Assembly (NCBI RefSeq): GCF_001194135.2
Contig: NC_068997.1
Span: 8,072,392-8,136,391 of the forward strand
Length of the DNA stretch: 64,000 bases
Reading direction: 5' to 3'
DNA from: Octopus bimaculoides
Taxonomy: Eukaryota
Positions 436-10,300 of this stretch are shown here, piece by piece (the stretch's first letter is position 1; each line of letters opens with the position of its first letter). Made by a program: the position numbers and the translations under genes. Under the pieces are notes generated by a model. The model did not search any database, had not been told where the DNA came from, and saw nothing but the letters and a program-made list of their open reading frames with translations.

Positions 436-476
436 CTCAATTTTATGTTTTCCCGCATCCATTTCTTTATATCTTC
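436..476 (-). CDS. Gene B exon homologous to gene A exon 2 (EDIKKWMRENIKL)
   Basis: Same 41-nt length and phases; both end ATAAAATTGAG|gtaat; KKWMRENIKL vs [10 protein letters not shown]. Confidence 0.85.
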
Positions 477-3400
477 CTGAAAATAAAGAAATGATTTTGA
501 ATGTTAGATGGAATGATTAAATTCCAATTACTGAGATTAATGCTATAAACACAGAATCTCAAATTTTATGTAAAATTACACAAAGAAGACATAACTGAAT
601 ACAAATAGCACAAGACATGAGAGTAGCCAAGATTATCTGGTGGAGATAATCCAATCCATATTAACAGATACAATGATTTCTTTTTTTTTTTTTTCTTATT
701 TAGTTTTTAGCATGGTAGACTGGTTTTGACATGGGGTTTGAATGAATTAAATCTTCTGGATAAAAACAGCGCCACTTGAGGATAACAGAATTTATTTAAC
801 CAATTTAAACATTCAGTAGAGTTTGTAAGCCATGTCAGATTTACAAAGTTCTATAATACCCCTAATATATCTTTAAAAAATTACTAAAAAGAAGGGGAAA
901 TAGAGAGTATTTTTGTAGATTCTATAAATTGGAGAATATTTTTGTTAGTGGATTCTTCAAAATAAAAACACAACTCCAGCCTTGGTAACCCTTTTGAAAC
1001 CATTTTATAAATCTCCTCTCTTCCAAACTGCTAATTTTTAGAACTGGAACAAATAATTCCATAAGGTTTCTGAATAATCTCCACAAGATTCCGTACATGT
1101 TTCTAATAAAATATAACTTCAAGAAACATGACACATTCAAAGCCAACAAAGTCATTGTGTGTTAACGTTACTCTGTCTTTGATGCATTTTATACATTGAC
1201 AGATTTGGCTGCGATAATGGAAGTATAGAGAAAAGGGTAAGATTAATTATGAGATACTGGAAGGAACGGTGAACTGTGTGATGAGGATGCAGAGTTTAAC
1301 AAATAAAACTATGCAGGATCAAGAGGGATTGTAATATACAATATAAGGAGATTATTCTGACGTGATTGATGGGTCACTGACCACTCATTAGAGGATAAGT
1401 ACTTCCTCATTCATTGCAGTTGGATGCACAGTATGCAGATTAGTCTACATAAGACAGTTAAGTTCTGATTTATGCAACAATGTGTCAGCACAGAAAAATA
1501 GATGTTCAAATGGTAATGATGATGTTTAATAGTACTTATCATATTGGTTGTTTTATATGAAGCACTTGAGAAAAAATTTATGGGAAAAGAAATACTAAGT
1601 CATGATAACTTCTTATTTTCCTTCAAACAGAAACTGAAACTAGGACTTGAAACCAGGTCAATGTCTCAGTTCACTGGATGTTTATCTCCCAGTGTAAGGG
1701 GTTTAGGAATGTCCAGTTATAACTACATTCTTCAAAGTTTCTCTTCCATTATTTAAGAAACCAATACCATTCAACTTTCATATTATATTCTCTGATTATT
1801 TTTCTGTCTCTCTCATTAAATAGAAACCAGGGCAAAGCAGACATCAGAGCTGAATACAGTCCTCCAAATCATTAGATCTTACTGAACTGTTTTATATATA
1901 TATATATATATATATATACATACACATACACACACAAGTAAGACTTGTATGTGTGTATACACACATACACATTTTGTCAACACACACACACACACACACA
2001 CACACACACACACACACACACACACACACACACACACACACACACACATATATATATATATATATATATATATATATATATACTATCCCTTAGTGGGTTG
2101 AACCCCCAACCCCTAACTCTCTCACGTTATATATATATATATATATATATATATATATATGCAAAACTGTTTCTTGCCTTCCAGGGAGGTCTTTCAAAGC
2201 ATTATGGAAAAAAAATCAGCAAAGATACAATGTACATAAAGATATAAAGAACATCGTAATAATATCTATAAAATTGGGAAATTTTACAAAAAAATTACTT
2301 TAAAATCTTTGGTTAACAAATTTATGCATCTCAGGTGCAATCCAAATTCTTATCAGATTTTACATGCATTTATACAACCATCATACATCCATCAAGATTG
2401 ATGCACTTGTATAAGTGCACATCAGTGCCTATGGCAAAATAGCAGTAGGAAAAATATAGTTTGCTCTGTGATTATGTAAAATAGTAAACTGATCCATCAA
2501 TATGAAAAATAGAAGGTTGCTCATTCAATTTGAAAAATGTTTGCCTGCTTTATTCATCTGCAAAATTTGTACACTGCTCTACATATATGAAAAAATAGTA
2601 ACCATCTGTACAATTGTATGCTAAAACATGTTAAGATATTCATAAACGAAATTTATAATGTTGCTGTTAATACAGAGTCATCAGTGAAATTTCAAACTAC
2701 TCATTGGTCATAATTTATAAAAACAGAAATAATAAAATTAATGAAAAATTTAGGATAATACTTTTTGGGGTTGCCCTTTCGATTCTGGAGACTGTTGTTC
2801 ACATAATGTATTATTTGTTGCCCGTTTCTTTGTAGTCATATCAAACATTGGTACTGACTCATATTTAGAGGTTGGTGATCTGAAAAACAATGAACCAGGG
2901 AGGAAGTTTAAGATTAGTAAAGTTTATTTGTCATATGGAGTGTAGTGTAACGTTCTGGACATTGCACTTCATCCTAGAAGTTAAGAAGAGGAGAAAAGCG
3001 ATGTAGTTGCATGGGATGAGAGCAAGAAAGAAAGGAATCTTATTGGAAGAGTGATGAGAAGGATGACTGAGAGAGAGCTTACGTCCAATGAGCCAGAGGC
3101 TGCAAGGTGAACAAAGGAGGAGGAAGTTACGAAATGAAGAGGAAAAGGTAAAAAGAGTCAGTGCCTCAAAGGCAAGTAGAGAAAAGGTGAAATGATTCCG
3201 TAAAGTGAATGAGAGAAAAAGGATAGCAGAGACAATAAACAACCAACGCTACAAGATACAGCCATTCACAAATAAAATTACTACAGTACTAATACAGTCA
3301 TCATCATCATCATCATCATCATTTAACGTCCACTTTCCATGCTAGCATGGGTTAGACGATTTGACTGGGGACTGGTGAACCAGATGGCTACACCAGACTC

Positions 3401-7310: not shown

Positions 7311-10300
7311 ATTTTCAAATTTATTTTTGTTTTGTCTTCAAACTCTTTCTAGTTAATTTGAATTTTCTTTCTAAAAATACAAAAATAGAGTTTTAAGTGA
7401 GAGTTAATGAAATTAAAAAAAACCTCTCCATATTTATAATAATTTTAAACTTTTCTTAATTCATTTTATCTTTCCTTTTTCAATAAATGAAGCCCTAAGA
7501 CACTCATGTTGAGAAATAAGGTGTGAAAGACAAACAACGAGCATTTATATCTTCTCTATTCTATGCAGCAACGCTGATATTGAATAGGTTTTTTTCAATA
7601 ATGATCTCAGCTGAAAAATATTGAAACAAAAATATTGGCAGGTAGACTTGATTGAAGGAAAGCTCGAAATATGTAACAACTTCTCAGAAAAAAGATTAGC
7701 CATGTGCAAAAGACTCTTGGCGAACTGAAAATCCCTGGAGGCAACATGTAAAAGTAAAAAAAAATGTGATTGCTATAAAAAGAAATTTCAGTCTGTATTC
7801 AGTGACCAAGAATATATTTAAAAAACTGCAAGATTATAAATCATTGAAGAGGAAAAGGGCACAAAAAAATAAAATCCCTGATTAATAATTAAATAAGTGA
7901 CCGAATAAAAAGGAGTATTTTAGAATTTTTAATAAAATAATGAAAGCAAAAATAATCGCTTATTGTTTTTGTAAATATGGCACCCGTACCAGCGTCACAT
8001 AAAAGTTACCATTCAAACATGGCTGATGCCAGTGCTGCTTGACTGGTTTCTAAGCTGGTGGCCCATAAAAAGCACCATTCAAGCATGGCTGATGCCAGTG
8101 CTACCTGACTGGCACTCATGCCAGTGGCACATAAAAAAGCATCTTTTGAGCATGGTCGTGCCAGTGCTACCTGACGGGCTCCTGTGCTGATGGCATATAA
8201 AAAGCACCCACTACACTCTTGGAATGGTTGGCGTTAGGAAGGGCATCCAGCTGTAGAAACCATACCATATCGGATTGAAGCTCGGTACATCCTCCCGGCT
8301 TGCCAGTCCTCAGTCAAACTGTCCAACCCATGCCAGCATGGATAGCAGATGTTAAATGACAACAATGATGATGATTTACATTTTTCAATGCAATACAGAG
8401 ACAGACATATACATACACGTGTTGAATTGTGCCAAACGAATGAGAAAAGAGGCCCCAATACATTTACATTTTGTGAAGTATACAGTTTATTGAAATAATG
8501 TTTTTCCTGTGACTTGAGTCACATTCCTTCAGTGTAGTGCAGCTTGAGTTATTAGGTCACCACTTGTTCAGAACACACCTCTTTAACCTATTTCTGAAAT
8601 TTCACATAAATTCTTTTATTATTAACTTGTTACTACTCTTATGGTCGTTGACTGGCAGACACCAGCTTTTATTCACCTGATGTTTCTAGTAGTTGTTCTG
8701 TTTCTAAAACAATTCACAATAATAATGCTCTGCATTTGTATCTAAGTAAAGAGCTGTTCAATTCAATGTCACTTGTGGAGATTGCAACCAATTCAAGGAT
8801 CAAATGGGATTTGATAGAGTTACTCAGACTGTACAGTTTATTGTCAATCGTCACACATAAAGAAAACACAAAGTCTACATTTTGCGTCTGGAATTTGTTA
8901 CAAGTGCCCAAGTCAGGATTGCAAAACAATTCCATCAAATCAGGAAAAGACAACTGCAAAATGACAGATTCTTGCTATTGTACTTGTGGTGCTTAAAATT
9001 TTAATCATGTCAGAGTTTGTCCTACGAAATGATCGTGTGAGTAAAGTCAATTTTCAGAGATATAATAATGAAATACTTTCACCAAAAACCTAAGTAAATT
9101 GGTAGATGTAAAATCATTGTGGAAATAGATGAATAATTGTTTCCCTGCAACACTGAGAAAATGGAAAAGAAACAGGTAATAATTAAAGGTTACAAATGTG
9201 AAAGGAAAAGAGAATAACTGATGTCAATGAAAGGCAAAAGTGCTTAGGTTTTAATTCCAATTGTTCTGGAAGGGATTACTCCAGGATCTATGATTTAGTC
9301 AGATATATATATAACATCAGAACTTTGGAAACTAAGGATATGATATTAGTATGATAAACCACTTCATAAATTTCACACATCCAAAAAAACTGGAATGTGC
9401 ACAAATTGGGTGGAAGGCATATGGACCAATACAAAAGGTAACCTGAAGACGATAGATGGCACACGGTACCACATGAAAGAATTACCTTGCAGAATTTATA
9501 TGGACTCAAATCTTTGATTAAAAATCATTTTCAATTTCTAGATCCTAGTTGCAACAAATATTTATCCTATATATTACATTATACATATTACAATTAGTCA
9601 TAGATGCTCTCTAAAATTTGGCAGTACCGAATTGTCTAAAATTCAACGTTATTAAATTGTTTAACATCTTGGATATTTTACAATCAGTCATGGACACTGT
9701 GGTTCTCCTGTTGAAAAGATTTGAATAAATTGTCTAAAATTTTGCTAAAAGTTGCCCAACTCTTTCTGTTTTGCCACATTAGGTTTTATTAAAATTAATT
9801 CTTTGAAATGTTTTTTTTAGAAAAATCATTTAAAAAGATGTGGTAGATTTTTTTCAAACATAATACGATTGCATGAAATATGAATAAAAGATGGAATGGT
9901 CATGGGTGAAATGCTTTTGATTTTAAATCTGACAGGTCACAGTTGTCCTGGGTTAAACAACAATAAAGAATAGTAAGAGCCACACTGAGTCAATAAGGAA
10001 TTTTCTACATAGTCACTTGACCTGCTAGAAAGAGAAACTATACTCAATTGTTGGTTAGTCTCTGATCAGAGTGGGGAGGGGGTCTTCCCCTCTCCTCTCA
10101 GTTCCTCGTAATTTTTCACTCTTGACTTTTGTTTTTTCCAGTTTTATGTTACTCTCACATTTTTACAGAATCATTTATATCATATATATATATATATATA
10201 TATATATATATATATATATATATATATATAGATAGATAGATAGATAGATAGATAGATATGTCAAATCTCAAAAATTACAAAATGGTGCGGAGGAGATCAA

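What the first reader, a model, noticed from the sequence alone, without database searches (positions are those of the whole stretch)
436..7370. A second TRPM-family paralog in head-to-tail tandem: possible lineage-specific channel array
Seen: exon 436-476 has the same 41-nt length, phases, 3' end (ATAAAATTGAG|gtaat) and peptide pattern (KKWMRENIKL vs [10 protein letters not shown]) as exon 2 of gene A, and it joins in frame to its own ATG exon at 7310. The N-termini upstream are unrelated (MSHRDREFGKGGGKGK.. vs [13 protein letters not shown]..). Inference: a local tandem expansion of diverged TRPM-like channels, plausibly sensory. None of these exons appears in the ORF track.
Basis: partly seen in the sequence, partly recalled or inferred. 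Interest (0 to 1): 0.8.

Follow-up and report, generated by a model that had tools for sequence, protein, structure and literature searches.

The report
Start of a neighbouring octopus TRPM gene
The short exon at 436-476 is the conserved N-terminal exon of a second, already catalogued TRPM-type ion-channel gene lying just downstream of its sister gene in Octopus bimaculoides, so this is an ordinary tandem duplicate whose public gene model is cut in two.

Summary
The window is Octopus bimaculoides chromosome CM046617.1 (chromosome position = 8,072,391 + window position); both genes read on the minus strand. Gene A (XP_014781149/XP_052830056, 1097 aa) has its coding sequence at 60229-15031.

The 41-nt exon at 476-436 is a true paralogue of gene A exon 2 (59978-59938). 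Length and phases match, 30 of 41 bases are identical, and the similarity runs into both introns (165 nt, E = 8e-17). It encodes the conserved TRPM N-terminal motif.

Downstream of the window, on the same strand, are a TDAFG exon and an ISVTGG exon, then the full body of XP_014774531 (SLOG, TRPM2-like and ion-transport domains). That protein is 64% identical to gene A with matching exon lengths and phases. The 41-nt exon joins the TDAFG exon in frame.

The tandem-paralogue inference is therefore right, but the locus holds two genes, not a larger array.

One detail is wrong. The exon at 5815 has only one GT donor, making it 53 nt, and including it gives a premature stop. Only the direct join 7290|476 is in frame.

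RefSeq splits gene B into a 169-aa model starting exactly at 7310 and a 994-aa TRPM model starting at an internal Met. A 2026 phylogeny already lists both genes as TRPM-beta. Interest is low.

The parts
436..476 (-). Gene B N-terminal coding exon, 41 nt, phase 0 in and phase 2 out. It encodes EDIKKWMRENIKL(R) and is the paralogue of gene A exon 2.
   Evidence: Sequence reads. blastn of exon plus flanks against gene A gives E = 8e-17. The encoded motif aligns with TRPM N-terminal KKWI..NIK(R)EC. It joins the downstream TDAFG exon in frame.
388..543 (-). Duplicated block (the exon plus 48 nt of 3' intron and 67 nt of 5' intron) shared with gene A 59891-60054.
   Evidence: 72.7% identity over 165 nt.
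7290..7310 (-). Candidate first coding exon of gene B (ATG, MSHRDRE, donor GAG|GTAAGT). It is also the exact start of the coding range of a 169-aa public gene model.
   Evidence: for the sequence; the next called gene starts at L004 62920, which is window 7310; it has the best donor among only 5 ATG-initiated phase-0 mini-exons in the 14.5 kb upstream of 476; the direct join to 476 is in frame.
5763..5815 (-). Including it breaks the TRPM frame. It is at best an untranslated or alternative exon and is probably not coding.
   Evidence: the chain 1+2+3 translates to ...SNDQKI*.
3300..4888 (.). Transposable-element fragment inside the 7290-to-476 interval, with an inverted copy at 18488-20055 in a gene A intron. 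Every candidate chain found that could reproduce a 169-aa product passes through its open reading frames.
   Evidence: 84.5% identity over 1625 nt.
252..403 (.). SINE-like dispersed repeat starting 33 nt downstream of the exon's donor site, inside gene B's long intron.
   Evidence: many copies in the window and in loci L001-L005.
59938..59978 (-). Gene A exon 2, the paralogous 41-nt exon ([13 protein letters not shown]).
15031..60229 (-). Coding range of gene A (XP_014781149.1 / XP_052830056.1, 'TRPM member-like 2', 1097 aa, 28 exons), ending 7.7 kb upstream of 7310.
   Evidence: domains.

Best explanation
Positions 436-7310 on the minus strand hold the 5' end of a second TRPM-beta (TRPM2-like, without the NUDT9H domain) cation-channel gene of Octopus bimaculoides. 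Its body is annotated as XP_014774531. It lies 7.7 kb downstream of its tandem paralogue, gene A, in the same orientation.

Shown:
- The 41-nt exon 476-436 is the homologue of gene A exon 2 and encodes the conserved TRPM N-terminal motif KKW(I/M)xENIKLR.
- A TDAFG exon, an ISVTGG exon and a complete TRPM body follow on the same strand, with the same exon lengths and phases as gene A.

Inferred:
- The exon splices across an intron of about 11.2 kb, which contains assembly gaps, to the TDAFG exon at chromosome 8,061,609-8,061,513. This gives ...KKWMRENIKLR-CISDEEEVLSPSESTDAFGEVKFVGYGRKIAK-FVRADHKIS-MEIII..., after which the RefSeq protein continues.
- The pair arose by a local tandem duplication. 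The leader exons then turned over: gene A's ATG exon sits 185 nt upstream of its exon 2, and gene B has no homologue of it.
- Translation of gene B starts either at ATG 7310, through a 21-nt exon spliced directly to 476, or at the ATG inside the 41-nt exon (MRENIKLR...), as in the O. sinensis paralogue model that begins MQKNIKLR.

The current public annotation splits the gene. One 169-aa model runs from 7310 into a low-complexity exon with a stop. A separate 994-aa model starts at an internal Met in the ISVTGG exon.

By family membership the product should be a subunit of a tetrameric non-selective cation channel. This was not tested.
For: - Exon homology, including both intron flanks.
- Window located on CM046617.1 at 100% identity.
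- The next called genes downstream are a 169-aa model starting exactly at 7310, then XP_014774531.2 (994 aa; SLOG, TRPM2-like and ion-transport domains), then a MOSC-domain gene.
- TDAFG exon at L005 8464-8560 and ISVTGG exon at 9974-10154, with phases that accept the AG| end of exon 476-436.
- The older partial RefSeq version (P0156) already joined the TDAFG exon to the body.
- Gene A and gene B proteins are 64% identical over 1032 aa.
- Parallel exon lengths and phases (181/181, 98/98, 135/135, 89/89, 101/101, 226/226).
- The reconstructed gene B has SLOG, TRPM2-like and Ion_trans domains and no NUDIX domain.
- The motif aligns with the KKWI..NIK(R)EC motif of mollusc and vertebrate TRPMs. 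O. sinensis and O. vulgaris paralogues carry EDVKKWIQENIKLR followed by CDAFG.
- The O. vulgaris model P0093 contains YKEMDAGKHKIE. That is window 472-436 read in another frame, so a near-identical exon exists in a second species.
- Both genes are listed as TRPM-beta in PMC13143021 Table S1.
Against: - No transcript data were available, so no splice junction is shown.
- The public annotation does not join these exons to the TRPM body.
- At the position homologous to gene A exon 3 (L005 3385-3477) the 169-aa model runs into a stop.
- 2,319 bp left of the window were not readable. The intron also contains N gaps, including one of 2.7 kb, so further small exons or a disruption could be hidden there.
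- The start at ATG 7310 rests on a strong donor plus coincidence with a computed model. As far as could be reconstructed, that model runs through transposable-element open reading frames.
- Four other ATG mini-exons with decent donors exist in the interval.
Confidence: 0.85

Rival explanations
1. The public annotation is right as it stands. The exons in the window belong to a separate short gene (169 aa, no known domain). The TRPM gene downstream starts at the internal Met (MEIII...), and the 41-nt exon is a leftover of the duplication that no longer contributes to a channel protein.
For: -: two separate called genes, with the first ending at a TAA at L005 3477.
- the homologue of gene A exon 3 is degenerate, low-complexity and stop-containing in that model's frame.
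Against: - A TRPM starting at MEIII would lack the conserved KWI motif, the TDAFG strand and the first SLOG residues that all relatives have.
- The TDAFG exon is intact, lies between the two models and is used by neither. An earlier RefSeq version did join it to the body.
- The 41-nt exon keeps an open frame, intact splice sites and the motif, and a near-identical copy exists in O. vulgaris.
- Every candidate chain found for a 169-aa product passes through transposable-element open reading frames.
Confidence: 0.1
2. Gene B is a decaying duplicate, a pseudogene or a gene with a disrupted N-terminus. The exon is homologous to gene A's exon 2, but no intact full-length open reading frame is made.
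For: - The leader exon homologous to gene A exon 1 is lost.
- The exon-3 homologue is degenerate.
- The annotation had to be split.
- Transposable-element and SINE-like insertions and assembly gaps lie in the long intron.
Against: - The 1041-aa body is open throughout, has all domains, and keeps the pore-region and TRP-helix segments nearly identical to gene A.
- A simple in-frame path exists from the 41-nt exon to the body.
Confidence: 0.05
3. The resemblance of exon 436-476 to gene A exon 2 is a chance match in AT-rich DNA.
For: None beyond the short length of the exon.
Against: - E = 8e-17 over 165 nt including the introns.
- The correct TRPM exons follow downstream in phase.
Confidence: 0

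Closest known systems
Octopus bimaculoides 'transient receptor potential cation channel subfamily M member-like 2', XP_014774531 (.1 partial, 1041 aa; .2, 994 aa)
   Same: This is the same gene. Its body lies 13-48 kb left of exon 436-476 on the same strand, and the exon joins its TDAFG exon in frame.
   Different: Neither RefSeq version contains the exons in the window. Version .2 starts at an internal Met, and the window exons are assigned to a separate 169-aa model.
Gene A of this window, XP_014781149.1 / XP_052830056.1 (TRPM-beta in PMC13143021)
   Same: It is the tandem paralogue: 64% protein identity, the same exon lengths and phases, and the same 41-nt second exon.
   Different: Its leader exon is unrelated (MTTNN.., 185 nt upstream, against MSHRDRE, 6.8 kb upstream). 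Its RefSeq model has two extra small exons (91 + 44 nt) between exon 2 and the TDAFG exon, and their counterparts in gene B are degenerate or unseen.
TRPM2-type channels with solved structures (Nematostella TRPM2-like 6co7; human TRPM2 6mix)
   Same: These are the best structural relatives of gene A (578 and 561 bits), with the same SLOG/MHR, TRPM2-like and six-transmembrane architecture.
   Different: The octopus proteins end after the coiled coil and have no NUDT9H/NUDIX domain. They also lack the Cys-rich stretch between the KWI motif and the TDAFG motif. TRPM3 scores almost as well (538 bits), so sequence scores alone do not place them in a subfamily.
Multi-SLOG TRPM-like models of O. sinensis (XP_036366207.1) and O. 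vulgaris (CAI9735606.1)
   Same: Each SLOG unit begins with the same exon motif, EDVKKWIQENIKLR followed by ..CDAFG.
   Different: Those models string two or three SLOG units together with no channel domain between them and span 241-404 kb. They lie at other loci and are probably merged tandem copies.

Membership tests
TRPM channel family (gene B as reconstructed) | N-terminal SLOG / melastatin homology domain (Pfam LSDAT_euk) | tested here: met
   233.5 bits, residues 52-310 of the reconstruction. The domain is encoded outside the window.
TRPM channel family (gene B as reconstructed) | TRPM2-like domain followed by a six-transmembrane ion-transport domain | tested here: met
   PF25508 at 140 bits and PF00520 at 71.5 bits. 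One search shows the pore-region segment [10 protein letters not shown] and the TRP-helix segment [10 protein letters not shown] conserved with gene A.
TRPM channel family (gene B as reconstructed) | Conserved N-terminal KWI..(K/R) motif preceding the (T/C)DAFG strand. This is the only part encoded in the finding's coordinates. | tested here: met
   KKWMRENIKLR aligns with KKWIKTNIKVKEC (Lottia), RKWIQENVSKKCC (Pristis TRPM2) and KSWIERAFSKREC (TRPM3). The Cys-rich continuation is absent in all the octopus paralogues aligned.
TRPM channel family (gene B as reconstructed) | One mRNA actually joins the window exon to the channel body | not testable with these tools
   No transcript data were available. 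Only frame and phase compatibility were shown.
TRPM-beta clade (TRPM2/4/5/8 side) | Phylogenetic placement within TRPM-beta rather than TRPM-alpha, beta-like, gamma or TRPS | not tested
   Taken from PMC13143021 Table S1, which lists XP_014781149 and XP_014774531 as TRPM-beta. My own neighbour-joining tree had only mollusc sequences and shows only that the octopod copies cluster together. PDB scores rank TRPM2 first and TRPM3 close behind.
TRPM2 proper (ADP-ribose-gated channel-enzyme) | C-terminal NUDT9H (NUDIX) domain | tested here: not met
   no NUDIX family hit in gene A or in reconstructed gene B. Both end shortly after the coiled coil.
Tandem gene duplicate | Adjacent on the same strand, collinear exon structure with the same phases, and homology extending into introns | tested here: met
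   adjacency, 7.7 kb apart; exon lengths and phases; intron-flank similarity around exon 2, the TDAFG exon and the ISVxGG exon.
Multi-gene array (three or more copies at this locus) | Further TRPM copies flanking the pair | tested here: not met
   the next gene downstream is a MOSC-domain gene; nothing is called in the 10 kb upstream of gene A. Other TRPM-beta copies are on the same chromosome but far away, for example at 30.3 Mb.

The most novel reading that the evidence does not exclude
Octopods may carry a lineage-specific radiation of NUDT9H-less TRPM-beta channels. These have lost the Cys-rich N-terminal segment, have turned over their leader exons, and at other loci have multiplied their SLOG domains. 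Gene B would then be an expressed, functionally diverged member, possibly with a sensory role, and its true N-terminus would be the one in this window. The evidence does not exclude this, but nothing here tests expression or function.
Probability: 0.2. Interest if true: 0.45.

Novelty: already known. Interest (0 to 1): 0.15.

Why it matters
The practical value is as an annotation fix. XP_014774531.2 lacks its first roughly 60 residues (the KWI motif, the TDAFG strand and the start of the SLOG domain). The upstream 169-aa model is probably an artefact built on gene B's real first exons plus transposable-element sequence.

Anyone cloning or expressing this octopus channel, or using it in TRPM phylogenies, should use the extended N-terminus.

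In evolutionary terms this is one more local duplication in a family already reported to duplicate repeatedly in molluscs. It is not a new kind of system.

Tried and rejected
1. I do not count this as evidence. The same tool missed gene A's own RefSeq proteins and returned only proteins of about 710 aa or less.

2. I tried to reconstruct the 169-aa public product. I enumerated GT-AG exon chains from ATG 7310 to the TAA at L005 3477 (timed out; 42, 45, 63).
- This gave 169-253 possible chains, nearly all passing through the transposable-element open reading frames at about 4446-5011.
- The ten chains with the fewest exons are not in the protein collection.
- The model's exon structure, and whether it uses 5815 or 476, remains unknown. 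It may also have exons in the unread 2.3 kb.

3. I looked for orthologous DNA in O. vulgaris and O. sinensis. The models that contain the motif have gene ranges of 241 and 404 kb, so no DNA was returned. Loci L001-L003 are paralogous, not orthologous.

4. I searched for a homologue of gene A exon 1 upstream of 476, and for homologues of gene A exon 4 in gene B. None was found. A 2.7-kb N gap could hide the latter.

5. I searched other loci for homologues of exons 7310 and 5815. None was found. They are unique sequence, neither repeats nor conserved in the paralogues.
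Full report
**What the window is.** The window is eukaryotic DNA of about 33% GC with 1,144 N. It matches Octopus bimaculoides assembly GCA_001194135.2, chromosome CM046617.1, at 100% identity. Chromosome position = 8,072,391 + window position. All the genes discussed read on the minus strand.

**Gene A.** Gene A is the RefSeq gene for XP_014781149.1 / XP_052830056.1, 'TRPM member-like 2', 1097 aa.
- I mapped its 28 coding exons exactly.
- Exon 1 is 60229-60164 (MTTNN..KKRN) and exon 2 is 59978-59938 (41 nt).
- The TDAFG exon is 54369-54285 and the ISVSGG exon is 53461-53281.
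- The last exon is 15129-15031.
- It carries SLOG, TRPM2-like and ion-transport domains and has no NUDIX domain.
- Its best solved relatives are Nematostella and human TRPM2, with TRPM3 close behind.

**The observation.**
- Exon 476-436 reads ttttcag|GAAGATATAAAGAAATGGATGCGGGAAAACATAAAATTGAG|gtaatt. It is 41 nt, enters in phase 0 and leaves in phase 2, and encodes EDIKKWMRENIKL(R).
- Gene A exon 2 has the same length and phases. 30 of 41 bases are identical, and the last 12 exon bases plus the first five intron bases are identical.
- blastn of the left 8 kb against the rest of the window aligns 388-543 with 59891-60054 at 72.7% over 165 nt, E = 8e-17. The homology therefore continues into both introns. 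This is a duplicated exon, not a chance match.
- No third copy of the motif is present in the window.

- ATG 7310 followed by GAG|GTAAGT is real. It has the best donor among only five ATG-initiated, phase-0 mini-exons in the 14.5 kb between gene A's stop and position 476.
- The exon at 5815 has a single GT donor, CA|GTAAGT, which makes it 5815-5763 = 53 nt.
- The chain 21 + 53 + 41 nt reads MSHRDREFGKGGGKGKHAVTFSNDQKI* and stops inside the third exon.
- Only the direct join 7290|476 is in frame (MSHRDRE-EDIKKWMRENIKLR).
- Exons 7310 and 5815 are unique sequence. They have no counterpart in gene A or in any fetched locus.

**What lies to the left of the window.** Looking up gene A's protein gave the locus with its called neighbours.
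- The next gene on the same strand starts exactly at window 7310 and encodes a 169-aa product with no Pfam hit.
- Looking up XP_014774531.2 (P0007, found) gave locus L005, which begins 2,320 bp left of window position 1.
- In L005 the 169-aa gene ends at position 3477. Its final open frame is at most 59 codons, low-complexity and proline-rich, and ends in TAA.
- XP_014774531.2 (994 aa; SLOG, TRPM2-like and ion-transport domains) runs from L005 10001 to 44525. A MOSC-domain gene follows it.

Between the two models, and used by neither, is an intact TDAFG exon at L005 8464-8560. It reads gacag|A TGC ATT AGT GAT GAG ... GCA AAG|gtaatt. The ISVTGG exon really begins at L005 9974 with FVRADHKIS, upstream of the Met at which the model starts. 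An older, 5'-partial RefSeq version (P0156, 1041 aa) already joined the TDAFG exon to the body.

**Frame test.** Exon 476-436 ends in AG|. The first base of the TDAFG exon (A) completes an Arg codon. The junctions read ...KKWMRENIKL-R-CISDEEEVLSPSESTDAFGEVKFVGYGRKIAK-FVRADHKISMEIIIYMIRNMW..., which is open and continuous with the RefSeq protein. An alternative acceptor 15 nt upstream is also in frame.

**Evidence that A and B are tandem duplicates.**
- The reconstructed gene B has all the TRPM domains.
- Gene A and gene B proteins are 64% identical over 1032 aa.
- Their exon lengths and phases run in parallel: 181/181, 155/164, 175/178, 113/110, 98/98, 135/135, 89/89, 101/101, 226/226.
- Intron flanks around the TDAFG and ISVxGG exons still align.

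**What the 41-nt exon encodes.** In an alignment of N-termini, KKWMRENIKLR lines up with KKWIKTNIKVKEC (Lottia), RKWIQENVSKKCC (a vertebrate TRPM2) and KSWIERAFSKREC (TRPM3).
- Octopus paralogues have almost the same peptide. O. sinensis XP_036366207 has EDVKKWIQENIKLR-NLRDEEASNPCDAFG.
- An O. sinensis model starts at the Met inside this exon (MQKNIKLR..).
- The O. vulgaris model CAI9735606 contains YKEMDAGKHKIE. That is window 472-436 read in another frame, so a near-identical exon exists in that species.

**Uncertainties.**
- No transcript data could be consulted, so every junction is inferred.
- The presumed intron of about 11.2 kb includes 2,319 bp that I could not read and N gaps of 10, 100 and 2,716 bp.
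- At the position homologous to gene A's third exon (upstream flank 81% identical over 47 nt), gene B has a degenerate, repeat-rich exon. The 169-aa model reads it into a stop. No homologue of gene A's 44-nt fourth exon was found.
- I could not recover the 169-aa protein. All chains compatible with its length pass through the transposable-element open reading frames at about 4446-5011, and ten guesses were not in the collection. The coincidence of its start with ATG 7310 is therefore only moderate support for that start codon.

**How large the 'array' is.** At this locus there are two genes. Other TRPM-beta copies and fragments lie elsewhere on the same chromosome.
- A C-terminal half-gene is at 30.3 Mb.
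- XP_052830018 has a gene range of 404 kb.
- O. vulgaris and O. sinensis have models with two or three SLOG units in a row.
- A crude neighbour-joining tree groups the octopod copies together, apart from other molluscs.

**Comparison with what is known.** PMC13143021 (Mol Biol Evol 2026) lists XP_014781149, XP_014774531 and XP_052830018 as the O. bimaculoides TRPM-beta genes. It also notes repeated species-specific TRPM duplications in molluscs, with up to eight genes. The paralogue pair is therefore already known. What this analysis adds:
- The two genes are adjacent and head to tail.
- Gene B's true N-terminal exon lies at 476-436.
- The current model is split and truncated.

**Verdict.** Novelty is 'already known', and interest is low.

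Noticed in passing
Gene A 59938-54285; gene B 436 to L005 8560; proteins P0069, P0164, P0159: All the octopus TRPM-beta paralogues aligned lack the Cys-rich stretch (C..F..C.CG..H) that other mollusc and vertebrate TRPMs carry between the KWI..K(R)EC motif and the (T/C)DAFG motif. This looks like a deletion specific to octopods.
   Followed up: partly
O. sinensis XP_036366207.1 (P0069); O. vulgaris CAI9735606.1 (P0093, 241-kb range); the 1197-aa gene at L002 1-9890; O. bimaculoides XP_052830018 (P0159, 404-kb range): These gene models contain two or three SLOG units in a row with no channel domain between them. They are either merged tandem partial copies or genuine multi-SLOG genes.
   Followed up: partly
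Window 3300-4888 and 18488-20055: These are inverted copies (84.5% identical over 1.6 kb) of a retroelement fragment with open reading frames. One sits in gene B's first intron and the other in a gene A intron. More reverse-transcriptase-like open reading frames lie at 22000-23550 and 61600-63250.
   Followed up: no
Window about 23100-23550 and 21689-21863: RefSeq isoform X2 of gene A (P0154/P0006) replaces the pore exons with a retroelement-derived exon (..[31 protein letters not shown]..) and a frame-shifted reading of exon 21863-21689. It is probably an annotation artefact or a non-productive isoform.
   Followed up: no
Window 252-403, with copies at 8228-8381, 19905-20057, 34301-34400, 37872-38013 and 40334-40393: A SINE-like dispersed repeat is present in many copies, both here and in all the octopus loci fetched.
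   Followed up: no
Window 57887-57797 and 56410-56367: Gene A's RefSeq model has two small low-complexity exons (91 + 44 nt) between exon 2 and the TDAFG exon, and other octopus paralogues lack them. Skipping both keeps the frame, so they may be cassette exons.
   Followed up: partly
L001 (CM046617.1, 30.29 Mb): The O. bimaculoides 'TRPM4' model P0002 (352 aa) is only the C-terminal half of a TRPM-beta copy, spread over 54 kb with introns of 17 and 26 kb. No N-terminal exons lie within 10 kb upstream.
   Followed up: partly
Tool behaviour: The word-indexed protein search returned only proteins of about 710 aa or less and missed the window's own RefSeq proteins. Negative results from it should not be read as absence.
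   Followed up: yes
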